Source: Podarcis muralis (Eukaryota). From it: a DNA stretch of 64,000 bases. Of the stretch, positions 24,745-57,585 are shown piece by piece. Under the pieces are notes generated by a model. That model made no database searches, was not told the origin of the DNA, and was given only the letters and a program-made list of their open reading frames with translations. The stretch is from positions 15,748,001 through 15,812,000 of the forward strand of contig NC_135661.1 of NCBI RefSeq assembly GCF_964188315.1. Reading direction: 5' to 3'. The position numbers and the translations under genes were made by a program. Within the stretch, counting starts at the first letter, position 1. Every line of letters starts with the position of its first letter.

Positions 24745-25768
24745 ATGGCAGTGGCAACAGACATCCTGGCGATGGGACTGGGAGGGCTGGGCTTTTTGCT
24801 TCTCGTTCTGGGTGCCGGAGCAGATTGCTGGAGGGTAAGAAACAAATTAAGAGGACTTTAAAGCTGGGAAGGGGGCGGGGGGTGGGGAATCAAAAGCTGT
24901 GTTGTGCCAAATACCTGCCCTTTGGTTTCCTCGGTTGTTTTCCCTTTTTCCTGCCTCATCTGTGGGTAGGGATGCAAAAACCTGTCTGATTTCATTTTCC
25001 GAAGGCAAACTTCAAGTTCCGAAATGAGATGTTAAGTGCAATGTAGCCAACCTTTGCGCTTCTTCAGATTTTGCAGGGCTGTTCTCCTCCACGCAATGTG
25101 TAGATAGCATACACTCAGTGGCGTAGCGTGGGGGGTGCAGGAGGGCCGGCCGCACCGGGCGCAACATCTGGGGGGGGGCGCGCTCGCACTCGCAGCTCTC
25201 TGTCCCTACCTGGCTCACTCACTCTCTCTCACTGCAGTGCTGGCTGTGCGAATCCGAGCCGAGCCGCCGGGTCGCCGCCCACTGTGGAGGGGGGGTGTGC
25301 CAGGCGTGCGGTGCGGGTTAGGGGGCGCAAATCCACGGGTTAGGGGGCGCAAATTACTTGCCTTGCCCCAGGTGCTGACAACCCACGCTACGCCACTGCA
25401 TACACTGGATCGCAACCTGTAGAAGTCCCAAGCACTGACAATGTGCAATTAAAAATTAAAACAATACTGAACCATATAATAAAATTGTACTATTTGTAAT
25501 GACACAGAACTTGCATGTATGCTGAAATGCACTTGCATGTATGTCATTGGTGACACCCAACAGGATCTGATATCCTCTCATTAGTTTGGAGGAATGCTCC
25601 CTGGCTTAGGTGGGGATAAGTAATAAAAAGAGAACAGGAATAATGAGGGAAGTATTTGTAGTGGAGGGTAAGGAAGCCTAACAAAGTTCTGGTTTCCCCC
25701 ATGGTGATTACTTAGAAGCTTTTTATTTTTTTGGAAATCTCAAATGTTAAATTACTTCCCAAAAGAAA

Positions 25769-25815
<47 letters not shown>

Positions 25816-26358
25816 ACCCCTGCTTTGCTGGTACCTGAAACGCGCTTAATCAGTCCATTGGGCAATCTAGCACTGTGTGCTACAAGACGAAGACACAAAG
25901 TCCTTCTGGGAAATTCTTCAACTTGGATCAGCTTCTGAGCCATTCCCTCATCCCAGCATACAAAAAATTTCTTGGTCCCCCTTTCCCTCTCTGAAGAAAT
26001 TGAAAACTTGCTTGATAGAAGAACTGGGGGGTGCTTGGCTTGTGCTGTTGTCAAACCCAAGGCCTGGTTGCCATAGGAACGTTAAGCTCTGGGGAAAATA
26101 TACAGCAGCGGCGAGGGCCGGTGTACTCCTGGAAAGGTCAAACCTGCTTCTGGTGACTTTGATAAAGAGGGGCCAGTGCCCCCAGCTTTGCCCTCACTGG
26201 GTAAACACTGGCCACGGGAGCCATCACCGCTTCTTCCTTTCTTCGTTGCTGAACCCTCTCCGGGTGTTGGATGCACAGGAGCCTGCTCTGTCAAACATAT
26301 TTACTAATATTCATAAAAGTGAGCTGCCTGTGTGTGTGAAAGATACATACATACAGGC

Positions 26359-26401
<43 letters not shown>

Positions 26402-27093
26402 AGAGAGTGTGGGCTGTGAGGATGAGAGTGCCCGAGACACAGGACAGTCAGAACATGATAACGTAAGAGCCTACTGGATCTGGCCAATGGCCCATCTAGC
26501 CCAGCCTCCTGTCCTCACAATGGTCAGCAAGTTTCCTCAGAGGCCTAGGACCCTCGTACTTATGGGACCACCTCTCCGGTATGACCCACGGAGGACCTTA
26601 AGGTCCATAAATAGCAACACCCTAGCGGTCCCGGGCCCTAAGGAAGTCAGATTAGCCTCAACCAGAGCCAGGGCCTTTTCAACTCTGGCTCCAGCCTTGT
26701 GGAACGCTCTGTCTCATGAGACCAGGGCCCCGCAGGATCTGATTTCTTTCCGCAGGGCCTGTAAGACAGAGTTGTTCCGCCTGGCCTTTATCTTGGAATC
26801 AACTTGATCCCCTCTTTCCTTTTTCCTTTCTCCTTCTGTGATGGAACTCCTATTTGGGGACTTCCCTGGCTTTTCTGGCCCACGTAGGACCAGTCTGGAT
26901 AGTTGACCTTGGTGAAGATTTGACGTTTTCATCCCCCAAAAGTTTATGATTTGACTTTCTACTGAAATGAGGCTGCATTTTAATGTTGTACTTAATCTTG
27001 TTTTTAAGTTGCATTTTAATCAATTGTTTTTATACCTGGTGCTGTTAGCCGCCCTGAGCCTGGTCTTGGCTGGGGAGGGTGGGGTATCAATAA

Positions 27094-27140
<47 letters not shown>

Positions 27141-30100
27141 ATGGGAAACCTGTAAGCAGGACCTGCACACAAGAGCCCTCTCCCCCTCCTGTGGTTTCCA
27201 GACACTGGTATTCAGAAGCATTGCTGCCTCTGACCGTGGTGGCAGAATGCAGCCACCACGGATAGCAGCCATTGATCATCTTCTCCTCCAGGAGGTTCTC
27301 CAGTCCTCTTTGAAAGCTATCCAAGTATGGCGGCCACCACTGCCTCCTGCAGGAGCGAGTTCCACAGATTACGCACTGTGTGAAGAAGTTATTCTCAACT
27401 GTCCTGGTCTGTGGACCAGCTGAATGGGGTTCATGAACAGCCCGTGGTCTGCAGGCCACTGCTTAAGAACCTCTAATTAAAAAATTAGTTCTCAAAGTCT
27501 CTCTCCACCCAACTTCTGATGATTCCACCCTGCTCACCTTCCTTCTTTCTTACAACGAGTCCAGAGTGTAGTCCTGGGTGTCTTCATCTTCCTCCTTAGT
27601 CTCAGAGTTGAACTTGGGGGATGCGGGGGATGGGGACAAAACTAGAATGAGTTAGCTCTGCCTGCCATGCCCTCTGGCGCCACCTACTGTTGGCCTCCCT
27701 GCCTTCTGTCCTACCAGACTTCATGGGCACCAGCCTCTACTGACTACAATTCCCACCACCCCAGTTCATTAGCCATGCTTGGGGCTGAAGGGTGCTTCAG
27801 GGAGTCCAACCACATCTGGAGAGCCTCAGGTTCTTTCCATCCTCGAATAGGGGACAGATTCCCTCCTGCCACAATCCTGAGGCTCCAACCAATTGGAGGG
27901 GCAGGCAGCCTGGGTACAACTGAGTTAGTCCACCAACACCTTTCTACTCAACTCCATCTCACTTCACCTCACCTGTCTGTACAAAAATCCCGGCGGTGCC
28001 TCATAACTGCACAGAACATTTCTTCTCTCTTCTCTTCTCTAGCAAGATGCCAAGGACCCCCTGTCTTCGGTAGGGCTGAGTGCCCGGTGCCGGGGGTTGT
28101 GGAGTGAGTGTGTGTTTGATAACGTCGCTGACCTCTGGACCTGTGACATCCCGATCTCCTATCTCAGCGAGCATCCAGGTGAGGAAAATAAACCAGGTCC
28201 ACCTAGTTGGAGCAGGTTGCAAAGGTGGACAGGACACATGGGAAGCTGCCCTGTACCATTAGTCCATCTAGCTCAATAATACCAGCACTGGCTGGCACTG
28301 GTTCTCCAAAGTTTCAGACAGCAGTTTCCCCCCAGCCTCACCTGGAGTTTTTCGGGGATTGAACCTGGGATCAGAGGCTCCCAGTCAAAGGTGCAGTTCT
28401 AAGACTCTCAGCTCAGTTATTGCCAGTGGGTTTATTCCATAAGTCACAACAATGGCCAAACAGTGGTCAGGTTACAAGGTGTGTAGGTCACCAGTCTCCA
28501 GGCGGAAATTGCTAAATGTCCTGGAAAATCCAGCCATATGGCAACCCATGTTGGGAGTGAAGTTTCCCACGTTGGGCAAAAGATTCCTACATTGCAGGGG
28601 GTTGGACTAGATGGTCCTAGTGGTCTCTTCCAACTCAACAGTTCTATTATTCTAACCCAGAGGAGGTTTTTGAGAGAAGGGGGAGAGATTTTGTTGTTGT
28701 TGCTGCCATTATTAAATAAGTGAGCATCAGAAACCCCACAGGAAAATTTGCCTGCAGTCTACCATTAAACTCTGATCTCCTTTCAAGGTGCCTTCCGTGT
28801 TCTAAAGTCTTGTTCTCTCTCAATTCTTCACCCCATCCCACCAGCTGTTCTCGTGGTCACTCGGGTCTTGGTGATCCTCTCTGCCTTTCTGACTCTTTCT
28901 GCCATACCTCCCTTCATTGCTGGCATGAAATGTACCAAGCTAATGCGCAGCAGAGTCCTTCAGAAACAGAAGTTCTCCCTGGCTGCTGGCATCCTGTTCC
29001 TCTTAGGAGGTAAGCACAGCCTTGCTTTGTTTCAGGTTGGGGCAGAATAGTACTTGATCTAGACCTTGGCTTCCACAGTCTCGTTTGTAGGGTGCCTCCT
29101 TCCTCTTCCTTTTTACATTAGTCCTGCATTAAAGCCTTTAACAGCAACCAAAAAACCGAGGAACCCTCCAGATTCCCTTTTATTCCACATTCATGATGAT
29201 TTGTGCTCACAATGGTATTGGGGTGGTTAAACTTGATCCCGCATTTATGACTGTCTGCACTTGCAACTTTTTACAGTCTGAACAGCTGTAGTGGCGAAGC
29301 AGTACAGATTGTTCATGTTCAAAATAAGTAAATGTAAGTTGAAAGAGAGTAATATGTGGAAGTATAGGGTTGTCTCCAACTAAGACCTACTCGGAGCAGA
29401 TCCAGGGCTGGGTTTAGGTTTGATGAGGCCCTAAGCTACTGAAGGTAATGGGGCCCTTTATATGTCCAGCTGTCCTTTGTCAACAACAAATTGTCACTGT
29501 TTTTTGTGTTGAATATATGCTATATGGTAGTTTAAAGGTAAAGGTACCCCTGCCCGTACGGGCCAGTCTTGTCAGACTCTAGGGTTGTGCGCTCATCTCA
29601 CTCTAGAGGCCGGGAGCCAGCGCTGTCCGCAGACACTTCCGGGTCACGTGGCGAACCTACTCTGGTGAGCCAGAGCCGCACACGGAAATGCTGTTTACCT
29701 TCCCGCTAGTAAGCGGTCCCTATTTATCTACTTGCACCCGGGGGTGCTTTCGAACTGCTAGGTTGGCAGGCGCTGGGACCGAGCAGCGGGAGCGCACCCC
29801 GCCGCGGGGATTCGAACCGCCGACCATGCGATCGGCAAGCCCTAGGCGCTGAGGTTTTACCCACAGCGCCACCCGCGTCCCATATATGGTAGTTTATGGA
29901 CCTTTAAATTTTTGGGGGGCCCCAAGAGAGTGGGGCCCTAAGCTACAGCTTGTTTAGCTTATACGTAAATCTGGCACTGAGCAGACCCATTTAACTAAGC
30001 TGGTCATGCCCGTTATTCAGAGTAGGACAGAGTAGGATGATGTATTATTATTATTAAGGAAGCCACGGCAGCTGGAAACTCTAATGTGGAATGGTCTCCC

Positions 30101-31788
30101 TTTCACAGGGCTCTCTGGAGCGGTTGCTTCTCTGTGGTACGGCATCGACACCGTTCAGAAGTATAAGCTTGAGGTAAGTGAGGTACCCTAAAAGAACATA
30201 TGAACAGAAGAATCATAGAACTGTAGAGTTGGAAGGGACCACACGAGGGTCGTCTAGTCCAACCCCCTGCATTGCCAGAAACTTCTGCCCTACATGGGGC
30301 TCAAACCAACCATTCTGAGGTTAAGAGTCTTAAGCTCTACTGACTGAGCTATATGGCAGAAGCTGCCTCATGCCAAAGTCTGCTAGCCCAGTACTGTTGA
30401 CACAGACAGGCACCAGCTCTCTAGGAAGGGAGTCTTTCCCAGCCCAGTTTGGCGATGGCTAGGGACCTTCCTGCATGCAAAGTAGGGGCTCCACCACACA
30501 GTTGTGGCCATTCCCCAATGGGAATGGAGTTTAGTACAGAACCTATTGAAAGCCACATGGATTCTTTAGGGCGTTCCCCATCCACCTCCTGCCTTGACTG
30601 GCTGCAGTTCCCTAGGGTCTCAGCCCTTTCCCAGAAGTAGCTGAGATGTCAGGATTTGAACCTGGGGCTTTCTGTCCGCAAAGCCCTACAAGTGAGAATT
30701 TTTTTTATGGTAATCAACACATGCCTTTAAAATGTGCTGCTCCCACCTGGTTCGATGCCTGCAGAGTGTCCGGGATCACTCACCATCTCTTTTTTTGTAG
30801 TATTTTTGCTTTTCCATTTTCAAAATTTAAACATAATCTTATTATCCACATTGTTTTTTGCTCTTCTGAGCCAAATCAACTTCTCCCCCTCCTGCCTCAT
30901 GGCTTTGAAAGTTCACCCTTATATCATAGCATTCATACATCTTCCATTTTACGTATTTCTCATTCAACTTATCTCCACTTTCAAATAAATAAAAAAGGTA
31001 ATAACCATTATCATTACAAGATTTCTTACAACCCTACTAGTGTTGGTAAATGTTTACAATAATCCTTCAAATATTGTACAAATTTACTCCAGCCTTTTAG
31101 GAAAGCTTGATCACGCTGGTTTCAGATTTTCCCGGTCAGCTTTGCCAATTCCGCATAGTCCATCATTTTCATCTACCACTCTTCAATCGTTGGTACAGTG
31201 GTACCTTGGGTTACATATCCTTCAGGTTACAGACTCCGCTAACCCAGAAACAGTACCTCGGGTTAAGAACTTTGCTTCAGGATGAGAACAGAAATCATGC
31301 TCCGGCGGCGCGGCAGCAGCAGGAGGCCCCATTAGCTAAAGTGGTGCTTCAGGTTAAGAACAGTTTCAGGTTAAGAACGGACCTCCGGAACGAATTAAGT
31401 ACTTAACCAGAGGTACCACTGTACTTCTTGTTGCTTCCATTTTTGGGCTAAAAGAGTCCTTGCTGCAGTAGTAGCATACATGAACAATTTATGATCGCCC
31501 TTTGGTATTTCTTCACCTACTATACCTAATAAAAATGCTTCCAGGTTTTTTTTTTAAGAAAAGGGATCGCTCACCATCTCAGTTCTCTTTCAGGTCAGCT
31601 TGGGCATCCCTGGCGTGACTTACGAGCTTGGCTATTCCTATTGGATGGCTGCCGCGGGCGCCGCTTGCTCCACTTCCGGCGGTGCCTTACTGATCGCCGC
31701 CGACTGCCTCGATGCCCAGGCGCCGAAGAGAAAGCAGAACCTTCTCTGCAGCCCACTGACCTCCAAAGGGCCACAAACCTACCTATGA
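24745..31788 (+). CDS. Divergent claudin-16-like protein (gene A), complete, 216 aa (221 aa from in-frame ATG at 24730)
   Basis: Exons 24745-24834 (90 nt), 28043-28178 (136), 28845-29009 (165), 30109-30173 (65), 31594-31788 (195); total 651 nt, GT-AG, open frame. Protein: MAVATDILAMGLGGLGFLLLVLGAGADCWRQDAKDPLSSVGLSARCRGLWSECVFDNVADLWTCDIPISYLSEHPAVLVVTRVLVILSAFLTLSAIPPFIAGMKCTKLMRSRVLQKQKFSLAAGILFLLGGLSGAVASLWYGIDTVQKYKLEVSLGIPGVTYELGYSYWMAAAGAACSTSGGALLIAADCLDAQAPKRKQNLLCSPLTSKGPQTYL. Claudin W-GLW-C-C signature and four hydrophobic segments; DCW, CRGLW and EHP motifs as in CLDN16. Confidence 0.88.
25116..25398. mobile_element. hAT MITE (family H2)
   Basis: TIR cagtggcgtagcgtggg...cccacgctacgccactg; perfect 8-bp TSD catacact. 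Confidence 0.88.
25772..25813. repeat. (GT)n microsatellite
   Basis: Direct reading; also (CA)n at 45721-45761 and (GACA)n at 26357-26400. Confidence 0.95.
26545..27138 (+). mobile_element. L2 LINE 3' fragment
   Basis: ORF2 C-terminus (RTLRS...[21 protein letters not shown]...FRRACKTELFRLAF), 3' UTR and (TTA)n tail; related inverted copy at about 37860-38390. Confidence 0.8.
29403..29979. mobile_element. hAT MITE (family H1, inverted, internally deleted) with nested Sauria SINE
   Basis: TIR cagggctgggttta...taaatctggcactg; TSD agcagatc/agcagacc. Confidence 0.8.
29535..29881 (-). mobile_element. Sauria SINE (variant subfamily)
   Basis: 14-bp TSD tatatggtagttta at 29521-29534 and 29883-29896. 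Confidence 0.88.
31196..31421. mobile_element. Tigger-like MITE, main family
   Basis: TIRs and TA TSD; last intron of gene A. Confidence 0.9.
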
Positions 31789-33527: not shown

Positions 33528-36500
33528 TCACACGCGGGAAGCCATGGCATACATTTTGCAAGTGACTATGGGCGAATGGTGTGTCAGGCGCTGAGGTCTC
33601 CTGCGGGGGGCAGCACCTGCATTGGAAAGAAGAATGGAAGTCACAATATTTAGAAATAGATGTGGCCCTCTCTAGTGCTCTTGGAGAGTGGTGCATACAC
33701 AGTGGCGTATCGTGGGTTGCCTCTGCCCCCCTCTGCAAGGAAAGTATTGCCCCCCTTAGAAAATTATTGCGCCCCCTAAGTGGCATTTCCATATGGTGCT
33801 GATGTTGCTACTGGACGGAGCTTCAGCGCAGCGGCGGGACATGTGCGTGCACCTCCTTGGGCTGGGGCACCACCATCGTGGCAAGTCTCACCGTCTGCCC
33901 GCCTCCTCTGCTGGTGGGGAGCGCTGCACAGCCAAAGGATGCAAGGGCCCATCCTCTCCCAGCTCCTGTTTGGAGTGCTGTCCAGGTGAGGCAGGCAAAA
34001 GGTTGGGGCAAAAGCTGCAGAGGTACGCTTGTAAGAATTTTTGCACTTGGAGCAATTGCCCCGGTAGCCCCACCACCATGCTACACCACTGTGCATACAT
34101 TATCTTGTAACAGCCCTGCTAGGTTATCTTCACCCATGCGGGGGAAGCACCATGAGCAGGGTTTCCTGACATCACCTCCAAATTGTCACTGTTGGGTGGG
34201 AGGAATTCAGCTAGGGCCCATCATCCCTAGGCAGCATGGCTAGTAGCTAGTAGGGTGGTTGGAACCTGTAGCCCAAGAATATCTGGAGAATGTAAGAACA
34301 TGAGAGCCCTGAGGAATCAGGCCAAAGGCCCATCTAGTCCAGCATCCTGTGGCCAACCAGATGCCCATTAGGGGAAGCCCCCAAGCAGGATCTGAGCATG
34401 ACAGCAACCCTCCCCGCTTGTGGTTCCCGGCAATTGGTATTCCAAAGCATAATGTCTCCAACAATGGAGGCAGAACATAGTGATAACTGGCTAGTAGCCA
34501 TCGATAGGCTCCCTGAATTTGTCTAGTCCTTCTGTAAAGGTATCCGAGTTGGTGGCTCTCACTACCTCTTAGTATAGTGAGTTCCATAATTTAACCATGA
34601 ATTGTGTGAAGAAGTGCTTTTCTCTACCCTGAGTCCTCCTACGTTTGGTTTTCTTGGATAGCCCCAGGTCCTAGCATTATAGGGAGGCACAAGTTTCCTA
34701 CCCCTCCCTTAGGACAATTGGGGGATATCCACAGCCAGTGATAACCACTACGGTTTTTCCTCTTACACCACCTTTGCTGCTGTCTCTGAACTCTTAACTC
34801 TTCGTACTGACCTCCTGCGGTGGCAGAAAGGCAGCAAGTCAACACAATGGCTGCCACGAAGCATCCTGAGGATCCCACCATTCCCAGCCAGCAAGACCAT
34901 CCAAAGTCATAATGGACTCCCAAGAACACACTGTGCAAGACAAGAGTGGTCCTCTCCATATAGATATCGACAGCATACCAGACAGAGCCCACCAGTCCGA
35001 GGACACCTGGTGGGCCAAGAAAACACAATTATCTTAAGAAAGGCAGAGGCCATATGCTGGGCCACTACCCAAATCCCTCTGTATATGTTCATATATGTGG
35101 CAAAATTGCTCCATATCAACTGGCCAGGGGTTGCATACCATTTTGGGCCAGTGGGCATATTTGGGCTAGTCACAAAATGGCTTCCCTGAGGTGTGCAGCA
35201 TAACACAAAATGGCTGCTGGCTGTAGGCGTAGGGGCATAACACAAAATGGCTTCCATTGTGAGTCATGGCACAACACAGGCTGGCTGTCTTATCTAAAGG
35301 AGCAGAAAAGGAGACCTGGATGGGAAACAGTGTGGTCCTGCCCTGGAATCAGGGGCAACACATCCCGTTGTGTAATGATGAGGGATGAGAGAGGTTGTAC
35401 ATGAGACTCCACTTTCCACCTCAAGGCTTGCCTCAGTAGCTGTCCTGGTCGATAACAACAAAGCCAGACCCCAATGGAAAAGGCACTTACTTCCGACTCC
35501 CAGGACTAATCCTGACGAATAGCGCATCTTCAGCTTAACGTGCGGCTCGTCCTTGAGAAACTTGATGCAGTCGAGGCCCAGCGCCAGCAAGACTAACGCG
35601 AATCCCGAGAGGATGTCAGCTGTGATCAGCAATGCTCGAGTCACCACAATCTTCACTGAGAAGGGAGAGCAAAATACAAGGTAGTTGAAGGTCAGTCAGA
35701 GAAGCATCCTACTGGCCTGGCGTCCCCTGTCTGACTCTGTTGGGAGGAACCATGAAGGTCTGTATAATACTGAGCCAGGTGATTTGTCCACCTAGACCAT
35801 CAATGTCTACACCAGTGGGCAGTAGCTCTCCAGGATTTCTCTCAGCAGTCCCTCCCATTTCTCTACCCGGATTAAAATGGGACCTTCTGCATGCATATCA
35901 GGAGCTATAACCACTGAGTTAGATCCCTTTCCTAAAATTAAAGCAAGGTGCCAGATAAAGAGTTGATTTAAATAGAAACATAAGAAGCTAACATACTGAG
36001 TCACTGGTGCATCCAGCTCATGATTGATGATTGTCTACACTGACTGGAAGCAGCTATACAGGAGTTCAGGCAGGGGTCTCTCCTAGGATACTTGGAGATG
36101 CCAGGGATTGAACCAGCAACCTTCTGCATGCAGAGCAGATGTTTTACCACTAAGCTATGGCTCTTCCCCCCGGTTCTTCCCTGCTCAAGCTGGCACCTGA
36201 CCTGTCTTCTGATGACCTCTCTGCCTCTGCCTCTTCCTCTATCTCCTGCTTCCTTATTTACCTAATCTGGTGCCTCTGACCTCCGGCCCATCCAAGATTG
36301 TGCCTCCTGCCCCTGCCCCATTTTGCAGACCAGACCCTTCAAGAGTCACCATTTTCCAGGAACGGTTCCAGTTTACAGAAGCCGTCCCGGTTTCTGATTA
36401 GATCCCGGAATGTCCCACTTTTCCTTAGGAAGTCTCTACAGTGGTACCTCGGGTTAAGAACTTAATTCGTTCTGGAGGTCCGTTCTTAACCTGAAACTGT

Positions 36501-37860
36501 GCTTAACCTGAGATACCACTTTAGCTAATGGGGCCTCCAGTTGCTGCCACACCGCGGCCACGCGATTTCTGTTCTTATCCTGAAGCAAGGTTCTTAACCC
36601 GAGGTACTATTTCTGGGTTAGCGGAGTCTGTAACCTGAAGCGTCTGTAACCTGAAGCATCTGTAACCCGAGGTACCACTGTATTTTCATCGGATAAATGT
36701 TGGCGGGTCTGGAGTTACATAACCCCTGAGCCAAGGAGATAAGTACTGTAACTGTACAACTTTTAGAAGACATCTGTATAGGGAAGTTTAAAAAAAAACT
36801 TTTAATGTTTTATTATGTTTTTATATATGTTGGGAAGCCGCCCAGAGTGGCTGGGGCAACCCACTCAAATGGGCAGGGTATAAATAATAAAATTGTTGTT
36901 GTTGTTGTTGTTATATAGGACATCCCTATTGTTATTGGAGAAATGTTGGAGGGTATGATTTTGGCTGAAGCCTGTTCCAGGCTAGCACTACCCCCATCCA
37001 ACTCTAAAAATGTAGGGCAGTGTTATTACCCCTATACTGCCGAAAAACAAGCTGAGGCTGAGAGAGATACAGCTTGCCAAAGAGTATTTGCATTGCCACA
37101 GATCACGGGCCCATTATTATCATCACTATAGGCCACTGGTGGAGAACTGTACTGGGGCTCCCGATTTGACCCATGAGGTCATGCCTTGTGCAGTGCAAGC
37201 CCCAATGACCAGACAACGGCTGGGGCCTCAGTGCGCAGCTCTATTTAAAGAAAAGCTCCCCTGATGTCATTGTGATGTCAGATGATTGACAGGTCAAACT
37301 TGGCCCATGGAAGGGGGCAGGAGATAGAGATTTGGCCCACCAGTTCCGAATCCAGTTCTCCACCTACTGATGTAAGCCTATCCAACCTTACTTTAAAGAG
37401 GACTCTCCACTGGTCAACCCTCATCTCTGCATTTTTACTCCACCCCTGGAGGCCTGATCATCAGTTCCAGCCCTTTTAGCAATCTTAACACGCTCGGAAA
37501 CCCACCCCAGCACCTCCAACAATTGGGGCCAACTGTAGAAGGGGAGGGTCGCAATTGTGCAATGGCTGAGAAAGCTTGAATGCACCCGAAGATGCTTCAG
37601 CCCATCAGCTGTTGGAGACTTACAGGGATGCTCTGCTAAAATGGAGTCGTACTGGTCGCAGGTCCTGATGCCGTCTTGCATGTTGGTGACACACTCCCTC
37701 CACAGTCCTCGGCATTTGTGGCTGACCTGCAAAGAACATCATCGGATGTTTTGGGTGCAAAAAGGGGTGCTGCTTGGGGCTGAGACAAATAGAGAAAGGG
37801 ACCTCCACATTTCCAGGCTTTCGCTGTACCTTTAAGCTTACTGTTTTATCTCATTGGTTT

Positions 37861-37913
<53 letters not shown>

Positions 37914-39617
37914 TATTTATTTATACCCCGCCCTCCCCGGCCAAGACCGGGCTCAGGGCGGCTAACACCAAATATAAATACAGTAAAAACATTTTAAAAC
38001 AAAACAAAACCAAACAAACAGTTGATTAAAATATAAGTTAGAATACAGTTTAAAATGCAGCTTAAAATGCAGCCTCGTTTTAATGGCAGCCTATAGATCA
38101 AAGCCATAAGGGGAGAAAATGTCAAATATTCACCGGGGCCAACTATCCATGCTGGTCCTACGTGGGCCAGCAAAAAGAGCCGAGGGAAAATTTATATACA
38201 AAATCCCACATTAGGGGTTCCATCAAAATAAATAAATAAGAGCGGGGGGGGGGGGGGGTTAGACTGAGTTCAGCCCAAAGGCCAGGCGGAACAGCACTGT
38301 CTTGCAGGCCCTGTGGAAAGATGTCAAATCCCGCAGGGCCCTAGTCTTTAGTGACAGAGTGTTCCACCAGGCCGGGGCCAGAGCTGAAAAGGACTGGATG
38401 TTTTAGACTGAAACATCTTAGGTTGCATCCTATTTACAACTTCCTCCACCTACTCTGACTTCTCTTTTGGACCTCAAGATGAGAGGGCACCTTGGGTCCA
38501 TCCTCTGAGAACAAAGGAGCAAGCATGTCTGCCTTTGTATTGCCCAGATTAATTGGTTAGGATAGAACGAAAAAACGTCCCTATCCAAGTTATGTACTAC
38601 CTATAATAAACTACTTTTCTTACTCCACAAGCATCTCTGCATGTTGGATTGCAACAGGTAAAGTTGACTCTGCAACTGGATTCTCAAGCCATATGCTACT
38701 CACTTTGCACAGCAAAGAGCTCCAATAGGTAATTGGGCTCAGTTCCTGTTGTGATTAGGGACACAGGTGGCGCTGTGGTCTAAACCACCGAGCCTCTTGG
38801 GCTTGCTGATCAGAAGGTTGGCAGTTTGTATCTGTGTGATAGTGTGAGCTCCTGTTGCTCTGTCCCAGCTTAGCAGTTCAATGTAGCAGTTCAAAAGCAT
38901 ACCAGTACCTTTTCCTCACCTATTATTTATTATATTACTACTACTGCTGCAGCTACTACTATAACTAGTTGGTTGCCTAACACAGGACTGGTTTACAATC
39001 AAATTTCATCAAGTACCCCAGGAGAGATGAACACTTTAGCTGCCAAAATGTGCCCATTTTGCAGGCAGGGAGCCTGACAGTAGGTGGCGCCAGAGCCAAT
39101 GACAGAAAGAGCAAAGTGATTCCAGTTTCACCCCCATCCTCCTCCCTGTTGAGTTCTGCAAAAGGCAACACTGAGACTAAGGAGTGGGGAGCCAACAGGC
39201 AGCCCCACCCTCTGAACTTGTTGTAAGCAGGTAGAGATGTGGGAGAGGCTGGCTGAGGGCAGATTGAACTGCCTCCACTGGATGTAAAGGTTGGCCCCAG
39301 GTGGGCATGGCCAGGGAAAGCACTCCACAAGCAGAGAAGGGTGACCGCAACCTTTCTTATTATGCAGAGGCCCTGAGGGAAGGGGGATGCAATGATAGAT
39401 CTGGAGAATAGGGAATGGTTGCATATATAGGCACCAAGCTAGCTACCCCAGCGTAGTAGAACATGCTGGAGCTCAGCTACCTGTTCCTGTTCCTCGTCCT
39501 CACCTCCAAGCTGTCATCAGCATTAACCATCCAGCAGTCGGTCCATGTGGCCGCGACCAGGAAGAGGGTTGAAATGAGAGCGACGCAGAAGGACATCAGT
39601 TGCAAAGCCACCGCCAT
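33528..39617 (-). CDS. Claudin-16-like protein (gene B; probable CLDN16 paralogue), complete, 221 aa
   Basis: Exons 39617-39504 (114 nt), 37726-37624 (103), 35655-35491 (165), 35006-34812 (195), 33616-33528 (89); total 666 nt, GT-AG. Contains [15 protein letters not shown]|[34 protein letters not shown]|[52 protein letters not shown] and C-terminal KMYAMASRV, co-linear with human CLDN16 as recalled (KMYAVDTRV). Intron positions also match CLDN16. No symbol is given because paralogue versus orthologue cannot be settled from this window. Confidence 0.93.
33700..34091. mobile_element. hAT MITE (H2-related TIR)
   Basis: TIR cagtggcgta...tacaccactg; perfect 8-bp TSD tgcataca; about 82 nt from the last acceptor of gene B. 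Confidence 0.8.
36439..36680. mobile_element. Tigger-like MITE, main family
   Basis: TIRs and TA TSD. Confidence 0.9.
37860..38390 (-). mobile_element. L2 LINE 3' fragment
   Basis: Reverse-complement counterpart of the 26545-27138 fragment, with a (TAA)n tail at 37861-37912. Confidence 0.75.
38759..38905 (+). mobile_element. Sauria SINE 5' fragment
   Basis: gggacacaggtggcgctgtggtctaaacc head, degenerate and truncated. Confidence 0.75.
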
Positions 39618-47177: not shown

Positions 47178-47620
47178 GCGGCTGTCTAGTGATGTATGGA
47201 AGTGAGAGCTGGACCATAAAGAAGACTGATAGCCGAAGAATTGATGCTTTTGAATTATGGTGCTGGAGAAGACTCTTGAGAGTCCCATGGACTGCAAGAA
47301 GATCAAACGCATCCATTCTTAAGGAAATCAGCCCTGAGTGCTCACTGGAAGGACAGATCGTGAAGCTGAGGCTCCAGTACTTTGGCCACTTCATGAGAAG
47401 AGGAGACTCCCTGGAGAAGACACTGATGCTGGGAAAGATGGAGGGCACAAGGAGAAGGGGGCGACAGAGGACGAGATGGTTGGATAGTGTTTTCGAGGTT
47501 ACCAGCATGAGTTTGACCAAACTGCGGGAAGTAGTGGACAGAGGTGCCTGGCGTGCTCTGGTCCATGGGGTCACGAAGAGTTGGACATGACTAAACGACT
47601 AAACAACAACAACAACAAAA
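47178..47620 (+). mobile_element. BovB (RTE) LINE 3' fragment, followed by an L1-type tail fragment to about 48075
   Basis: VMYGSESWTIKKTDSRRIDAFELWCWRRLLRVPW...RRRGRQRTRWLDSV; (CAA)n tail. Confidence 0.9.
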
Positions 47621-51900: not shown

Positions 51901-54900
51901 GATAACCCTCTTGTTGAGGAATAATCCACCTTGTTAACTTGTTTCCACAAAGTTGTATTTGTTCTGAGCCGCTTCGAGTCTACCGAATAAAGCAAGGGTG
52001 GAGTGTATTTTTCAACCTTCTCTTCTGGGCAACCTTCTGGGGGCTACGTGCCAGTGGTGGGCAGCAGGCCAGAAGCAAAAGTGGGTGGAGCAATAAATAT
52101 CACTCTCGTCTTACTGTATAATGGCAATGGAAGACTGTCGTCAGGCTGCAGTTCCCTTGGCCACCAAGAGGTGTCACTGTCCACTTCAGTGTAGTGAGTG
52201 GTGGCAGATGGGCAGCCTAGGGAATCCGTGGGGTGACAGCAAGGGCACTCTGCAGCAGCCACCCAGCTCCACTGGCTCCCCCACCTGCCGGCTTCAAGGG
52301 CCTTGCCCTCAGGATTCAGATAACCAGGCTGACCACTGGACTGCTGGTCACCTACCCCCTCTGCATCCCGCCTTGGAATCTGTTGCTATTGATTGACAGG
52401 AAGAATGACAGGAAGAGCAGACCAGAGAGGTGGAAGATGCCCAGAAGCATAGTCTGGCCTTGAATACTGCAGGAGCAGCAGCATGGAGAAGGCACTCAGC
52501 AGTGGCAGCCAACCAGCCTCCAGATCTGCAGCACAATCCAGTTTCCACGTGTTGTCATACACACATGTCTGTCCTCCATCCAGGGATTCTCAGAGTTTGA
52601 GGACACAACCATGCCAGGCAATAACACCCAAAGAGAGTACAAATAGAGCAGGCAAAGGACCAGGGAGAGTCCTCAGGTCAGAGGAAGATGCCCAGAGGGC
52701 CACATCTGGCACCCAGGCTGGGACAAGGCCCACGGGGTATATATTAGCCTTCAGCTTACTTACCTGCTAGTAGGAAGAAGACACCCCCCAACACAGCGAT
52801 CCAGCTTTTCACCACGGGATTCTCGTCTCCAACTTTGGTGCATTTCATTCCGATCACGCTGACAACAGCCCCGACGAAACCCAGGAGGATGGAGACCACC
52901 ATAAGTGCCCGGGAAGTCTGGATATGAACTGGAAAACAAGAAAGTGCCTGTCTTTGGGGTGTCCAAGGGGGGAAAGAGGCAGCTGCAATTGCAGGGTTAA
53001 GTTGCTTAAAATGGCCCTTAGGGTTGCCATATGTTGAAGAGCAAAAAAGAGGTCACATTTGCTGACTTCTACTTTTAACTATGGATCACTACACAGTGGG
53101 TGGCGCTGCAGTCTAAACCACTGAGCCTCTTGGGCTTGCTGATCGGAAGGTTGGCAGTTTGAATCCCCGCGACCAAGTGAACTCACGTGGCTCTGTCCCT
53201 GCTCCTGCCAACCTAGCAGTTTGAAAGCACACCAGTGCAAGTAGATAAATAGGTACCGCTCCGGCGGGAAGGTAAATGGCATTTCTGTGTGCTCTGGCTT
53301 CCGTCACAGTGTTCAGTTGTGCCAGAAGCGGTTTAGTCATGTTGGCCACATGACCCGGAAAGCTGTCTGGCCTGAAAGAGAGATGAGCACCGCACTCCAC
53401 TGTCGCCTTTGACTGGACTTAACCTTCCAGGGATTCTTTACCTTTTTACCTCTACCCATGAAATAGAGGATGTGACCTGGAAAAAGAGGACATATGGCAA
53501 CACTTCCAGGAACTAATTTTTAACAAAGGCAGTTTATTTTATTATTTTATTATTTATTTCCAATTAAGAGTGCTGTCAGGGGTTCAGGAGCAGAGGCAAG
53601 GGCAAGGGAGGAAACAGAGAGCGAAGGGGAGGAGGCAGAAGAAAGGATGAGTGATGACGACGACCCGAGATCTCCGAGTCTCTCCAGTGAGTCGGAGGAT
53701 TCACAGAAAGGAGCACCAGTGGCCAAGGCAAGGGGGGAGTTTAGGGGGGCACCCCAGGGAGATAGAGCCAGAGGGGAATCAGAGGAGAGCAGTTGGAGAT
53801 CGGGTCCAGCGTCACCGCCAGAGAGCAGGGAAGAGGAAAGGAGCCAGGGGGCAAGCGCTGGCAGCTCACAGCAGGAGGGAGGGCACGAGTCAGGGGTGGC
53901 CACACCTCCATCTGGGAGCGAAGAAACGGTTAGACGGAAGGTGGAAGGTTGGGCGCGCGCGCCAAGTTCAAATGCACAGGAAGGAGGCGCAGTAGGCAGC
54001 CCGGAAAGAGAGCCGGGTCCTAAAGCCCGGCGCAAGGAGACAGGAGAGTCCGGGGGGTCAGCGTCCGAAGAATCCCGGAAGGAAGAGACCCAGGGGGGCA
54101 GAGGGACCCAGAGAAGAACAGTCAGGCGGAAAAGGTGGAGCAGGGCTAGGATATTAAGTTGGTGTACGAGGGGCGGAGATTCAGACGGAGCTTCGCCGAT
54201 CTAGCTACTAGACGTAGGGTTGCACGCAGCAGCTTGAGAATGGAAACTGTAACTCAATAAAGACTTTTACTTAATGACCGTTGGCTGGCGTGATCCTCTG
54301 TGAGCTAGGATCCTGAAGCAACCCTGACAAGTGCCATGTTCCAACCTCTGACGTATGGGCAAAGGGCTCCCTTACCTGTTAAAGGCCTCTTTGACACATT
54401 GGCTAAAGGCTCTTTACAGCTTTACCCAATGACTCTCGCCCATTGACATATAGGCAAAGGGCTCCTTTAACAGTTATATGCAACACTTATGAAAAAGCTC
54501 TGACACAGAGGCAAAGAGCTATTTAACCTGGGCTCTACACCTTGAATCAGATCCACTGGCACACAGGCCAAAGGCTCCATCAGCTCTGAAAGGGGTCTCT
54601 GAGGCAGAGGCTAACAGACTCTCACAAACTGACACATGGGCGCCATTTTGAATCCATCTGTCAGGCCCAAACTCTGCCAATTTGGATGCCTCTGAAGATT
54701 TCCTAATTCCAGTTTGGTGTGATGGGCTCCCGATAGCAAGGAATGGGCTTTGGTCTCTGTTTCTTAGATTCCTGGGGCAACACCGTGTGTACTGCCAGCT
54801 AGCTAGCTAGCTAAATAAATAAATAAATAATAGTTAATTCTCAGCAAGCAGTTGCACCCATGCAAGAATGTCACACACGCACAGTTACTGTTTTAGATCT

Positions 54901-56881: not shown

Positions 56882-57585
56882 AAGCAAGAACACAGGTCTC
56901 TGCCCCTAAAAATGTACAATCCAAAATTCAATGCACTGGAGACAGTCGAAGGCAATGGGGGGGGGGGCGCTTTTCTTTTCTATTTTAGGACAAGAGAGAA
57001 GCAGAGCTCTCAGCCGCCGCCACTGCGTAGCTAAAACCTTCGCTAACGGGGCCTCCCGCTGCCGTTGCACAATTTCTGTTCTCATCCTGAAGCAAAGTTC
57101 TTAACCCCAGGTACTATTTCTGGGATAGCGGAGTATGTACCCTGAAGCGTCTGTCACCCGAGGTACCACTGTACTTGATTTAGAGGTGGTACCTCGGGTT
57201 ACAGACGCTTGGAGGCTGCGCTACATCCCGTCAGGCGAGAGCCCCGCTTCCCGTACCCACCCGCAGGCTGCCTGTTGGACGCCAGCGAGGCGCAACCGCA
57301 GCCCCGGCTCTCCCTGTGCGCCCACCTCCCCCCCCCCCACCCCATGCACCCTTGGGACGCACCGTCGAGCGAGAGCAACGACTCGTGGAGCTTGCACTGG
57401 ACCTGCCCGGTGCTCTGCGAGGCGCAGCTCATCCAGAGGCCCTCGTACAGCCCGACGGCCGTGATGATGGCGTCCCCGGCGTAGGAGCTCTGCTTCCATT
57501 GGGGCAGCGCCGACGAGCAGATGGAGCCCACCAAGCCGCCCAGGGCCATGAAGTAGCCCACCAGCTGCAGCCCCGCGCTGGCCAT
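48939..57585 (-). CDS. CLDN19: Claudin-19, complete, 209 aa (AREYV isoform)
   Basis: Exons 57585-57363 (223 nt), 52928-52764 (165), 51234-51150 (85), 49095-48939 (157); total 630 nt. The sequence [59 protein letters not shown] and STAREYV is diagnostic for CLDN19 rather than CLDN1 or CLDN7. Confidence 0.93.
49146..50504 (+). mobile_element. Probable solo LTR-like element interrupted by an L2 tail (49225-49460) and a hAT MITE
   Basis: Inverted termini tgtcga...tcgaca; internal GC boxes, CCAAT, atttaaa and a degenerate caataatgttgtagcc polyA region; no conventional TSD. Confidence 0.55.
49868..50184. mobile_element. hAT (Charlie-like) MITE
   Basis: TIR catgggtaggcaaac...gtttgctgacccctg; TSD cgttaaag/tgttaaag; internal direct duplication. 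Confidence 0.75.
53097..53450 (+). mobile_element. Sauria SINE, diverged
   Basis: Recognisable head, body and tttacc tail. Confidence 0.85.
53574..54329 (+). mobile_element. Solo LTR (Gypsy-like), 756 bp, antisense in CLDN19 intron 1
   Basis: Inverted termini tgtcagg...cctgaca; perfect 5-bp TSD AGTGC (53569-53573, 54330-54334); AATAAA near 54256. Confidence 0.9.
54349..54644 (+). repeat. Degenerate 20-bp motif repeated 5-7 times with non-identical spacers
   Basis: Consensus TGACAYAKRGGCWAAGGGCT at 54349, 54392, 54444, 54501 and 54557; weaker copies at 54600 and 54630. Confidence 0.7.
55305..55535. mobile_element. Tigger-like MITE, main family
   Basis: TIRs and TA TSD. Confidence 0.9.
55739..55958. 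mobile_element. Tc1/pogo-type MITE (family 5)
   Basis: Inverted ends attggcccgaatataagcc...ggcttatattcgggccaat. Confidence 0.65.
56030..56265. repeat. Diverged tandem duplication, period about 117 bp
   Basis: gaggcttcctttgaggcaaggttcaccaggggtcac... versus gagccttcccttgagacgaggctcaccagaggtcac... Confidence 0.7.
56300..56630 (+). mobile_element. L1-type 3' fragment
   Basis: [31 protein letters not shown], the same family as the 2777-3406 insertion. Confidence 0.7.
57030..57209. mobile_element. Partial Tigger-like MITE plus an adjacent inverted TIR fragment
   Basis: Right half of the MITE ends at 57171; second TIR fragment at 57186-57209. Confidence 0.75.

What the first reader, a model, noticed from the sequence alone, without database searches (positions are those of the whole stretch)
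33528..39617. Gene B keeps the CLDN16 cation-selectivity residues and PDZ tail but has targeted charge and TM3 changes
Seen: gene B aligns without gaps to human CLDN16 (235-aa numbering, from recall) through TM4. It retains acidic ECS1 residues D34, D35, E49, D56 and E70 (D104, D105, E119, D126, E140 in 305-aa numbering, reported to affect cation selectivity) and FHHNC sites R79, L81, G121, A139 and R146. Differences: W48->R and E63->Q make ECS1 less negative; YKFG->YDFG is a charge reversal in ECS2; G128->S falls at the exon 3/4 junction (human G198 is a disease position); TM3 is strongly diverged; the C-tail is shorter but ends KMYAMASRV, still a class I PDZ motif like TRV. Inference: a functional channel-type paralogue with altered selectivity or partner specificity, not a pseudogene.
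Basis: partly seen in the sequence, partly recalled or inferred. Interest (0 to 1): 0.78.

Follow-up and report, generated by a model that had tools for sequence, protein, structure and literature searches.

The report
Lizard claudin-16-like gene, ancient CLDN16 paralogue
Gene B is an intact, selectively constrained lizard gene for "claudin-16-like", an old sister gene of the kidney magnesium/calcium-pore protein claudin-16 that sits next to claudin-19 in non-mammalian vertebrates, is missing from mammals, and is already annotated in public databases although nobody seems to have studied its function.

Summary
A five-exon, minus-strand gene (CDS 39617 to 33528, all GT-AG) encodes a 221-aa claudin. 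It aligns without gaps to primate CLDN16 from M71 through TM4.

- **Not a lacertid novelty.** The protein is 100% identical to RefSeq XP_028597528.1, "claudin-16-like [Podarcis muralis]".
- **An ancient paralogue.** Trees and same-species co-occurrence show two CLDN16-type clades. True CLDN16 occurs in mammals, birds, turtles, squamates including Podarcis, amphibians, lobe-finned and basal ray-finned fishes. CLDN16-like occurs in squamates, crocodilians, birds, turtles, frogs, sturgeon, eels, bony-tongues and chimaera, with no mammal among the hits.
- **Genomic context.** CLDN16-like lies just downstream of CLDN19 in lizard, ostrich, eel and chimaera.
- **Age of the flagged changes.** E133Q and an acidic residue at K231 mark the whole CLDN16-like clade. 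W118R, G198S and P200L mark all sauropsids. None is lacertid-specific.
- **Functional gene.** dN/dS is 0.10-0.26, and 0.00-0.06 in ECS1. A transcriptome contig from a related species joins all five exons at the predicted borders.
- **Charge.** It shifts between the loops rather than being lost: ECS1 -5 and ECS2 -2, against -9 and +1 in lizard CLDN16.

Altered selectivity or partner choice remains untested. The scan's first stage also noted the cluster on this same window (s1-193661).

The parts
39504..39617 (-). Gene B (CLDN16-like) exon 1 CDS: Met1 to Glu38, covering TM1 and the start of ECS1 with D34 and D35
   Evidence: Sequence reading and splice donor GTGAGG. The 114-nt exon has the same size in all orthologues and in true CLDN16. 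A joint 39502/37724 (cut +2) appears in a contig of run X2.
37624..37726 (-). Exon 2 (103 nt): the rest of ECS1 with the GLW-R-EC motif, holding R48, E49, D56, Q63 and E70
   Evidence: Acceptor TTTGCAG and donor GTAAGT. Joints seen at 37624/35655 and 39502/37724 in the X2 contig.
35491..35655 (-). Exon 3 (165 nt): TM2, the intracellular loop and the first half of TM3. Its last base is the first base of the Ser128 codon.
   Evidence: Joint 35489/35004 (cut +2) in the X2 contig.
34812..35006 (-). Exon 4 (195 nt): the rest of TM3, ECS2 with YDFGWS, and TM4
   Evidence: 95% identical to the Podarcis raffonei protein. Joint 34810/33614 (cut +2) in the X2 contig.
33528..33616 (-). Exon 5 CDS (89 nt including TGA): cytoplasmic tail ending KMYAMASRV, a class I PDZ-type ending S-R-V
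57361..57585 (-). Neighbouring gene CLDN19, exon 1 (75 aa), upstream of gene B and in the same orientation
   Evidence: phmmer E = 3e-37 to mouse claudin-19 3X29; next best is claudin-9 at 9e-19. Translation.
52765..52932 (-). CLDN19 exon 2 region (TM2 to TM3)
   Evidence: 68-69% identical to the corresponding exon upstream of CLDN16-like in eel and chimaera.
28067..31788 (+). Gene A, a third, divergent claudin lying tail-to-tail with gene B. It is context only and the subject of another note.
   Evidence: tblastn hits at 28067-28177, 28829-29008 and 31558-31764. Orthologues sit in the same position in five squamates and in Callorhinchus.

Best explanation
**Identity.** Gene B is the Podarcis (most likely P. 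muralis) orthologue of 'claudin-16-like' (CLDN16L). CLDN16L is an ancient vertebrate paralogue of CLDN16.

**Origin.** It most likely arose with the duplication of a two-gene block, a classic claudin plus a CLDN16-type claudin. This happened before cartilaginous and bony vertebrates diverged. One copy became CLDN1-like/CLDN16. The other became CLDN19/CLDN16L.

**Distribution.** CLDN16L is kept immediately downstream of CLDN19 in chimaera, eel, birds and lizards. No mammalian copy was found.

**Product.** It encodes a four-helix tight-junction claudin whose first extracellular segment is almost frozen.

**Shown here.**
- Gene structure.
- Identity to the RefSeq model.
- Clade membership.
- Synteny with CLDN19.
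- Purifying selection.
- Splicing in a related species.
- The clade-level age of each flagged substitution.

**Inferred.**
- It keeps all five acidic ECS1 residues that make CLDN16 cation-permeable.
- It keeps nearly all positions where CLDN16 missense mutations cause disease.
- It keeps a -S-R-V PDZ-type tail.
- From these I infer that it forms, or contributes to, a cation-permeable paracellular pathway. It probably copolymerises with CLDN19 and is anchored through ZO-1.
- Its properties should be shifted relative to CLDN16 by a redistribution of charge: ECS1 -5 instead of -7 to -9, and ECS2 -2 instead of 0 to +1.
- The remodelled TM1 and TM3 (G198S, P200L) may also shift them.
For: **Identity and annotation.**
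- Model and translation.
- 0 differences to P0221, XP_028597528.1 claudin-16-like [Podarcis muralis].
- Pfam PF00822 scores 55.6 bits against a cut-off of 26.7, over residues 5-181.
- The AF2 model has four confident helices, and the best Foldseek hits are claudin-4, -15, -9, -3 and -19.

**Two clades.**
- In the careful ML tree of 71 rows, CLDN16L (32 rows) and true CLDN16 (33 rows) are separated by one branch. Support is UFboot 79 / SH-aLRT 98, and the split appears in 100% of 200 bootstrap trees.
- Sauropsid CLDN16L has support 97/98, and squamate CLDN16L 100/99 (quick trees).
- Both genes occur in the same species on different contigs:

| Species | True CLDN16 contig | CLDN16L contig |
|---|---|---|
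| Hemicordylus | 359.6 Mb | 17.4 Mb |
| Eublepharis | 145.6 Mb | 46.5 Mb |
| P. lilfordi | 98.3 Mb | 85.0 Mb |
| Mixophyes | 349 Mb | 100 Mb |
| Callorhinchus | 20.3 Mb | 10.2 Mb |

**Synteny.**
- CLDN19 lies upstream in the window.
- A CLDN19-like gene lies upstream of CLDN16L in ostrich, eel and Callorhinchus.
- The other Callorhinchus CLDN16-type gene has a different, divergently oriented 211-aa classic claudin beside it.

**Structure and constraint.**
- Exon sizes are the same in both paralogues: 114/103/165/192-195.
- Whole-gene omega is 0.10-0.16 against other squamates and 0.26 against Zootoca (binomial p = 0.002; 3e-24 against Tiliqua).
- ECS1 omega is 0.00-0.06.

**Expression.**
- A 1677-nt contig in run X2, about 96.5% identical to the window, joins all five exons at the predicted borders.
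- The eel orthologue is listed as differentially expressed in larvae (PMC8227761).

**Residues.** Site and charge tables. Functional meaning of the residues from PMC3867513 and PMC7140793.
Against: - **No functional data.** I found none for any CLDN16L.
- **No expression in the window's own species.** Two RNA-seq runs of that species (X10, X11, tissue unknown to me, about 12% of reads sampled) gave zero depth on the exons. The only contig from that species on exon 4 runs on into intron 4. Expression and tissue in Podarcis are therefore not shown.
- **Run X2 is only guessed to be RNA.** A processed retrocopy in that relative could in principle give the same joined contig.
- **Pore or modulator is open.** ECS1 is 2-4 charges less negative than in CLDN16, and W118 next to E119 is replaced by Arg. 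That could weaken or change the pore, so a barrier or modulator role is not excluded.
- **Root unresolved.** The CLDN19 outgroup branch is very long, and the lamprey and shark sequences move between trees. 'Before the gnathostome ancestor' rests mainly on Callorhinchus having both genes.
- **Mammalian absence is limited evidence.** It is absence from the protein hits (23 of 23 mammalian hits are true CLDN16), not a genome search.
- **No structural check of the loops.** The AF2 model gives no usable ECS1 (pLDDT below 50 for residues 29-70).
Confidence: 0.72

Rival explanations
1. Gene B is a functional tight-junction claudin that acts mainly as a modulator or barrier rather than as a cation pore. 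It would compete for CLDN19 copolymers, as CLDN14 does against CLDN16 in the mammalian thick ascending limb.
For: - ECS1 net charge is -5, against -9 in the same lizards' CLDN16. Arg replaces Trp next to E119.
- TM1 and TM3 are remodelled (9/24 identical), and these helices matter for cis-assembly.
- PMC12704743 shows that a second claudin can replace CLDN16 in CLDN19 polymers.
- CLDN16L evolves about 2.8 times faster than CLDN16 in the same species pair: omega 0.22 against 0.08.
Against: - All five acidic residues shown to carry CLDN16 cation permeability are conserved across the clade.
- ECS1 is under the strongest constraint in the protein, with omega 0.00-0.06.
- Summed ECS charge is -7, the same as in mammalian CLDN16.
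Confidence: 0.2
2. Gene B is simply the lizard orthologue of mammalian CLDN16, and the differences are ordinary species divergence.
For: - 62% identity and a gap-free alignment to primate CLDN16.
- Identical exon structure.
- Several database entries of this clade are named plain 'claudin-16', for example in Alligator, Struthio and Sphaerodactylus.
Against: - A separate true CLDN16 exists in squamates, including Podarcis lilfordi, Anolis, Pogona, Hemicordylus and Eublepharis. It groups with mammalian CLDN16, keeps W118/E133/K231/G198 and -TRV, and lies on another chromosome.
- Gene B lies beside CLDN19. In Callorhinchus the other CLDN16-type gene lies beside a different classic claudin.
Confidence: 0.02
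3. Gene B is a recent lacertid or squamate duplicate undergoing targeted neofunctionalisation. This is the implicit reading of 'targeted charge and TM3 changes'.
For: The flagged substitutions cluster at charged extracellular positions and in TM3.
Against: - Orthologues with the same gene neighbours exist in chimaera, eel, frogs, turtles, crocodilians and birds.
- Every flagged substitution is shared at least by all sauropsids.
- Lacertid-only changes are few and conservative, such as A97, I142, V171, A180, S188 and tail residues.
Confidence: 0.02
4. Gene B is a decaying or non-expressed copy: a pseudogene in the making.
For: - No reads on the exons in two RNA-seq runs of the window's species.
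- One unspliced contig over the exon 4 / intron 4 border.
Against: - Intact 221-codon ORF and four canonical introns.
- Nonsynonymous changes are significantly under-represented even between Podarcis and Zootoca: 11.5 nonsynonymous against 13.5 synonymous, p = 0.002.
- A fully spliced contig exists in a relative.
Confidence: 0.03

Closest known systems
Claudin-16 (CLDN16, paracellin-1), the cation-permeable tight-junction claudin of the renal thick ascending limb, mutated in FHHNC
   Same: - Five-exon structure with identical exon sizes for exons 1-3, and 192-195 nt for exon 4.
- Gap-free alignment from M71 through TM4, 62% identical; ECS1 44/49 identical.
- All five acidic ECS1 residues are kept (D104, D105, E119, D126, E140).
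- Disease positions R149, L151, G191, A209, R216, F232, G233 and W234 are kept.
- The tail motif KMYAxx(S/T)RV is kept.
   Different: - Separate clade and separate chromosome; lies next to CLDN19.
- Q at 133, I at 145, A at 162, L at 163, H at 229 (clade-wide).
- R at 118, S at 198, L at 200 (sauropsids).
- Acidic residue instead of Lys at 231.
- -SRV instead of -TRV.
- Last coding exon is 89-92 nt instead of 140 nt, so the tail is about 14-16 residues shorter.
- ECS1 charge is -5 against -7 to -9; ECS2 is -2 against 0 to +1.
- About 2.8-fold higher omega.
RefSeq/UniProt 'claudin-16-like' entries (XP_028597528.1 / A0A670IN51 Podarcis muralis; also P. raffonei, P. lilfordi, Zootoca vivipara, and many birds, turtles, frogs, eels and Callorhinchus)
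   Same: Gene B's protein is identical, residue for residue, to the P. muralis entry. It differs at 4 residues from each of the other two Podarcis entries and at 11 from Zootoca (95-98% identical).
   Different: Nothing differs in sequence. These are automatic annotations without functional or evolutionary description. Naming is inconsistent, with some orthologues called 'claudin-16'.
Claudin-19 (CLDN19), the obligate partner of CLDN16 in mammals
   Same: Same protein family. It is the physically adjacent gene, upstream in the same orientation, in all CLDN16L loci examined where the flank reached it.
   Different: It is a classic claudin with a different ECS1 (GLWMSC; not rich in acidic residues) and a different gene. 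Partnership with CLDN16L is inferred, not shown.
Claudin-14, the CLDN19-binding modulator that displaces CLDN16
   Same: It offers a possible analogy: a second claudin competing for CLDN19 polymers (PMC12704743).
   Different: There is no close sequence relationship. CLDN16L keeps the CLDN16-type acidic ECS1.

Membership tests
Claudin family (Pfam PF00822 PMP22_Claudin) | Profile match above the curated cut-off over the four-TM core | tested here: met
   PF00822 scores 55.6 bits (cut-off 26.7) over residues 5-181. PF13903 scores 31.5 bits (cut-off 29.1).
Claudin family (Pfam PF00822 PMP22_Claudin) | Four transmembrane helices with the claudin fold | tested here: met
   - The AF2 model has helices at 2-29, 72-99, 110-151 and 164-192 with pLDDT 85-94.
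- The top Foldseek PDB hits are all claudins (claudin-4, -15, -9, -3, -19), with target-normalised TM-scores of 0.60-0.66.
- ECS1 itself was not modelled confidently.
Claudin family (Pfam PF00822 PMP22_Claudin) | W-GLW-C-C signature in the first extracellular segment | tested here: met
   W29, G45-L46-W47, C50 and C61 are present and invariant in the 55-sequence alignment.
True CLDN16 orthologue group | Groups with mammalian CLDN16 in a tree, to the exclusion of other CLDN16-type genes of the same species | tested here: not met
   Gene B falls in the other clade. The squamate true CLDN16 proteins (P0167, P0170, P0173, P0175, P0210 and others) group with mammals.
True CLDN16 orthologue group | Diagnostic residues W118, E133, L145, G162, F163, G198, Q229, K231 and the -TRV ending | tested here: not met
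   Gene B has R, Q, I, A, L, S, H, D and -SRV at these positions.
True CLDN16 orthologue group | Genomic position at the CLDN16 locus (beside CLDN1 in mammals, by established knowledge) | tested here: not met
   - Gene B lies downstream of CLDN19.
- True CLDN16 of the same lizards is on other contigs.
- CLDN1 adjacency itself could only be checked indirectly, in Callorhinchus.
CLDN16-like (CLDN16L) paralogue group | Tree placement within the clade that holds RefSeq 'claudin-16-like' of sauropsids, frogs, basal ray-finned fishes and chimaera | tested here: met
   - Nested in squamate CLDN16L (100/99) and sauropsid CLDN16L (97/98).
- The group is separated from true CLDN16 in 100% of bootstrap trees.
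- Identical to XP_028597528.1.
CLDN16-like (CLDN16L) paralogue group | Position immediately downstream of CLDN19, in the same orientation | tested here: met
   Seen in the window. The same arrangement occurs in ostrich, eel and Callorhinchus, and an upstream claudin is present in Zootoca, Tiliqua and Eublepharis.
CLDN16-like (CLDN16L) paralogue group | Short tail ending (D/A)-S-R-V, plus Q133, I145, A162, L163, H229 and an acidic residue at 231 | tested here: met
   Lacertids have A instead of the clade-typical S at position 250.
Cation-selective paracellular channel claudins (functional class) | Acidic pore-lining ECS1 residues shown to set cation permeability in CLDN16 | tested here: met
   D34, D35, E49, D56 and E70 are all present, and they are conserved in 35 or 36 of the 36 CLDN16L sequences, depending on the residue. 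Their role is taken from PMC3867513.
Cation-selective paracellular channel claudins (functional class) | Measured cation-over-anion or divalent-cation permeability when expressed in epithelia, and dependence on CLDN19 | not testable with these tools
   Needs electrophysiology in transfected epithelial cells.
PDZ-anchored claudins | C-terminal class I PDZ-binding ending (S/T-x-hydrophobic) that binds ZO-1 | tested here: inconclusive
   The S-R-V ending is present and conserved from chimaera to birds. Binding was not tested.

The most novel reading that the evidence does not exclude
CLDN16L, together with its genomic neighbour CLDN19 (and perhaps the third clustered claudin, gene A), forms a second, physically linked paracellular cation system.
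- It would be ancestral to jawed vertebrates and lost in mammals.
- Its selectivity for Mg2+/Ca2+ against Na+ would differ from CLDN16/CLDN19 because negative charge has moved from ECS1 to ECS2.
- It could be the 'unknown partner' of Cldn19 in those fishes that lack CLDN16.
- It could be relevant to divalent-cation handling in sauropsid kidney, gut or shell gland.
Probability: 0.3. Interest if true: 0.6.

Novelty: already known. Interest (0 to 1): 0.33.

Why it matters
**For the scan.** The finding resolves to an ordinary, already annotated gene. The 'targeted' substitutions are old clade markers, not a lizard innovation.

**What is worth keeping is the wider picture.**
- Non-mammalian vertebrates carry two CLDN16-type genes.
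- The second one is tightly linked to CLDN19, the obligate partner of CLDN16 in the mammalian kidney.
- It is under strong constraint, and mammals appear to have lost it.
- In the open literature I could search, the name 'claudin-16-like' occurs once, in a table (PMC8227761).
- A recent fish-kidney paper states that the Cldn19 partner in fish is unknown (PMC11605958).

**Natural mutants for pore studies.** CLDN16L differs from CLDN16 at W118R, E133Q, K231D/E and G198S/P200L. These could serve structure-function work on the CLDN16 pore and on CLDN19 pairing.

**A caution for comparative work.** Studies that use 'CLDN16' probes or annotations in chicken and reptiles may be looking at either gene.

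Tried and rejected
1. **Exon-by-exon Pfam and PDB searches.** Too short; only sub-threshold claudin hits. Replaced by a word search seeded from the stop-free frame around exon 4. The whole spliced protein could not be given by reference.
2. **NCBIfam scan.** No hit, as expected for a prokaryote-oriented library.
3. **Rooting with the window's CLDN19 exons 1-2.** The outgroup branch is about 6-10 substitutions per site. The root and the placement of the lamprey and shark sequences are unstable, so I make no claim about them.
4. **AlphaFold2 with a 55-sequence alignment.** The TM helices are confident, but ECS1 (residues 29-70) has pLDDT below 50 and no coordinates are returned. Therefore no electrostatics, and no test of whether R48 and D161 are in contact.
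5. **RNA evidence in the window's own species.**
   - X10 and X11 gave zero depth on the exons.
   - X1 gave only an unspliced piece.
   - Reads piled up only on intronic repeats.
6. **tblastx of the ostrich CSD (YBX1-like) neighbour against the window.** No hit, so the window does not reach that gene.
7. **Literature searches.** Terms tried: 'claudin-16-like', 'cldn16l', ohnolog/synteny/whole-genome-duplication with CLDN16, and teleost or chicken paralogues. Nothing describes this paralogue. Subscription-only claudin phylogeny papers (Baltzegar 2013, cited in PMC10991444) could not be read.
8. **CLDN1 beside true CLDN16.** The 10-kb flanks in Hemicordylus, Eublepharis and quail were empty of claudins. 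Only Callorhinchus showed a neighbouring classic claudin. Calling it CLDN1-like rests on recall.
9. **The big representative search.** Not used. It carries no names or taxonomy, so it could not have tested absence in mammals.
10. **Human sequence.** None was fetched or compared. Gorilla CLDN16 served for numbering.

Full report
**1. What is in the sequence.**

ORF listing and direct reading of the minus strand give five coding exons:

| Exon | Coordinates | Notes |
|---|---|---|
| 1 | 39504-39617 | ATG at 39617 |
| 2 | 37624-37726 | |
| 3 | 35491-35655 | |
| 4 | 34812-35006 | |
| 5 | 33528-33616 | TGA at 33528-33530 |

- Each intron is bounded by GT..AG. The exons join into a 666-nt ORF of 221 codons.
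- An in-frame TAG lies seven codons upstream of the ATG. There is therefore no counterpart of the long primate N-terminal extension.
- The finding's coordinates are exactly this CDS.

**2.

For numbering I used gorilla CLDN16 (P0135, 305 aa). No human sequence was fetched.

- The alignment is gap-free from M71 to the end of TM4, with 135 of 218 positions identical.
- D104, D105, E119, D126 and E140 are kept. So are R149, L151, G191, A209 and R216.
- W118 is Arg, E133 is Gln, K231 is Asp, and G198 is Ser. The Ser codon is split A|GT over the exon 3/4 junction.
- TM3 is 9/24 identical. ECS1 is 44/49. The tail ends KMYAMASRV.
- PMC3867513 confirms the role of the five acidic residues in Na+ permeability, and the TRV->RRV ZO-1-binding mutation.
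- The variant table of PMC7140793 confirms the disease positions, including G198R/A/D and the F232/G233/W234 cluster next to K231.

**3. What it is.**

A word search seeded from the stop-free frame around exon 4 found a 221-aa 'claudin-16-like' of Podarcis raffonei. Its 90% cluster holds entries from P. muralis, P. lilfordi and Zootoca vivipara. Gene B's protein is identical at all 221 residues to the P. muralis entry XP_028597528.1 / A0A670IN51. So the window is very probably P. muralis, and the gene is already annotated with the same model.

Searches with that protein, and with a bird 'CLD16' protein, return two sets of CLDN16-type proteins.

- **True CLDN16.** This set holds mammalian CLDN16 plus 'claudin-16' of birds, turtles, tuatara and squamates (Anolis, Pogona, Hemicordylus, Eublepharis, Varanus, snakes, Podarcis lilfordi). 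It also holds amphibians, coelacanth, lungfish, and sturgeon, bichir and gar.
- **CLDN16L.** This set holds the 220-222-aa proteins of squamates, crocodilians, birds, turtles, frogs, sturgeon, eels, bony-tongues and Callorhinchus.

In a careful ML tree the two sets are separated by one branch (quick versions).
- Support is UFboot 79 / SH-aLRT 98, and the separation appears in all 200 bootstrap trees.
- Gene B sits inside squamate CLDN16L (100/99) and sauropsid CLDN16L (97/98).

Many species carry both genes on contigs of very different size: Hemicordylus, Eublepharis, P. lilfordi, Mixophyes, Anser and Callorhinchus. All 23 mammalian hits are of the true CLDN16 type. The root and the place of the lamprey and shark sequences are not resolved.

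**4. Genomic context.**

- The classic-claudin exons on the same strand at 57361-57585 and 52765-52932 are CLDN19. The match to mouse claudin-19 3X29 has E = 3e-37; the next best, claudin-9, has 9e-19.
- CLDN19 -> CLDN16L in tandem is also found in ostrich, eel and Callorhinchus. An upstream claudin is present in Zootoca, Tiliqua and Eublepharis.
- Downstream and convergent lies a third claudin, gene A, in five squamates and in Callorhinchus. Ostrich has a cold-shock-domain gene there, and eel has a V-set gene.
- In Callorhinchus the other CLDN16-type gene has a divergently oriented 211-aa classic claudin beside it. That claudin is only 49/74 identical to the same fish's CLDN19-like exon 1.
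- This fits the duplication of a two-gene block. From general knowledge, human CLDN1 and CLDN16 are head-to-head neighbours, and YBX1, CLDN19 and P3H1 are neighbours on another chromosome. I did not test this here.
- Both paralogues have the same exon sizes, 114/103/165/192-195. The last coding exon is 89-92 nt in CLDN16L and 140 nt in CLDN16.

**5. How old are the 'targeted' changes?**

From:

| Level | Changes |
|---|---|
| Whole CLDN16L clade | E133Q; acidic residue at 231 (Glu in anamniotes, Asp in sauropsids); L145I; G162A; F163L; Q229H; -SRV instead of -TRV |
| All sauropsid CLDN16L | W118R (25/25 other sequences); G198S (23/25); P200L; R185K; I203V. Anamniote CLDN16L keeps W, G and mostly P. 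|
| Squamates | D->A at the -3 position of the tail |
| Lacertids only | A few conservative changes in ECS2 and TM4, plus tail residues |

True reptile CLDN16 lacks these substitutions, but every sauropsid CLDN16L has them.

**6. Charge.**

| Protein | ECS1 net charge | ECS2 net charge |
|---|---|---|
| Gene B and all sauropsid CLDN16L | -5 | -2 |
| Anamniote CLDN16L | -6 | about -1.5 |
| Mammalian CLDN16 | -7 | 0 |
| Bird and turtle CLDN16 | -8 | 0 |
| Squamate CLDN16 | -9 | +1 |

The sum over both loops (-7) equals that of mammalian CLDN16. The charge has moved rather than been lost.

**7. Is it functional?**

I extracted CDSs from loci of Zootoca, Tiliqua, Elgaria, Hemicordylus, Eublepharis and ostrich so that they translate exactly to the database proteins.

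NG86 estimates:
- Whole-gene omega is 0.10-0.16 between Podarcis and other squamates, and 0.26 against Zootoca.
- ECS1 omega is 0.00-0.06.
- TM3 omega is 0.04-0.16 at the deeper comparisons.
- The tail is 0.3-0.6.
- The high TM3 and ECS2 values against Zootoca rest on 2-3 substitutions each and mean nothing.

Nonsynonymous changes are under-represented at p = 0.002 against Zootoca and 3e-24 against Tiliqua. For the same species pair, CLDN16L has omega 0.22 against 0.08 for CLDN16.

Reads:
- A 1677-nt contig of run X2 comes from another, closely related organism. It is about 96.5% identical to the window over the laid parts, and the run type is only guessed as RNA.
- That contig covers 33560-33614, 34810-35004, 35489-35655, 37624-37724 and 39502-39559. 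All four introns are removed at my borders, allowing for the stated 2-nt ambiguity.
- Two RNA-seq runs of the window's species gave no depth on the exons. One low-depth contig runs from exon 4 into intron 4.
- Splicing is thus shown in a relative. Expression in Podarcis is not shown.
- The eel orthologue appears in a larval differential-expression table (PMC8227761).

**8. Family tests.**

- Pfam PF00822 scores 55.6 bits against a cut-off of 26.7.
- No CLDN16 structure is in the PDB. The nearest solved relatives by sequence are claudin-18.2 and claudin-19.
- The AF2 model has four confident helices and matches claudin structures. ECS1 is unreliable.

**9. Mechanism.**

*Shown:* an intact, constrained, spliced claudin gene of the CLDN16L clade, linked to CLDN19.

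*Inferred:* it acts as a cation-permeable tight-junction component. It probably copolymerises with CLDN19 and is anchored through its -SRV ending. Its properties should be shifted by the ECS charge redistribution and by the remodelled TM1 and TM3. A modulator or barrier role, analogous to CLDN14 (PMC12704743), is the main rival.

**10. Novelty.**

- The gene and its exact product are in RefSeq and UniProt under an automatic name. The kind of thing is a claudin.
- I found no paper in the searchable library that describes this paralogue.
- A salmonid kidney paper says the partner of fish Cldn19 is unknown (PMC11605958).
- The cluster was also noted by the scan's first stage on this same window (s1-193661, s1-193673). 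I confirmed the CLDN19 identity and the conservation of the cluster.

**Verdict.** Interest is low to moderate.

Noticed in passing
window 24730-31788 (+), exons about 28067-28177, 28829-29008, 31558-31788: Gene A, a third, divergent claudin lying tail-to-tail with gene B.
- Orthologues sit in the same position in Zootoca, Tiliqua, Elgaria, Hemicordylus, Eublepharis and even Callorhinchus (70% identical in the ECS1 exon).
- Ostrich and eel have unrelated genes there (CSD and V-set respectively).
- None of the 220 CLDN16-type proteins then held matched it better than gene B.
   Followed up: partly
window 57361-57585 and 52765-52932 (-): CLDN19 exons 1 and 2, upstream of gene B on the same strand. 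Later CLDN19 exons between 39.6 and 52.7 kb were not mapped.
   Followed up: partly
L012:404-718 (-) (Callorhinchus milii): The second CLDN16-type gene of the chimaera has a divergently oriented 211-aa classic claudin next to it. Its exon 1 is 49/74 identical to the same species' CLDN19-like gene. It looks CLDN1-like by recall, which would mirror the mammalian CLDN1/CLDN16 pair.
   Followed up: partly
proteins P0107 (flamingo) and P0138 (Grus japonensis): These public models are mis-joined.
- P0107 fuses CLDN19 exons (matching window 57567-57352 and 52953-52765) to CLDN16L.
- P0138 starts with a LINE reverse-transcriptase fragment like window 4051-4338.

Naming of this clade in databases is inconsistent ('claudin-16' against 'claudin-16-like').
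   Followed up: partly
window 36360-36960; also 34160-34360, 38160-38360, 38760-38960: These intronic stretches of gene B collect enormous depth in all four runs laid (summed contig depth 1e3-1e5; raw RNA reads up to about 140x). Many reads have loose ends, so these are high-copy interspersed repeats, not part of the transcript.
   Followed up: no
window 37850-37920, 27090-27140, 36900-36920: There are long trinucleotide runs, read as poly-Ile, poly-Asn or poly-Tyr ORFs. There are also LINE RT-like ORFs at 23917-24399 and 47189-47590, and an RT fragment at 4051-4338.
   Followed up: no
L010:21841-25595 (Coturnix japonica, true CLDN16 locus): A 147-aa gene without a Pfam hit lies downstream of true CLDN16 in quail. 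By recall this fits TMEM207, the mammalian neighbour of CLDN16. Not tested.
   Followed up: no
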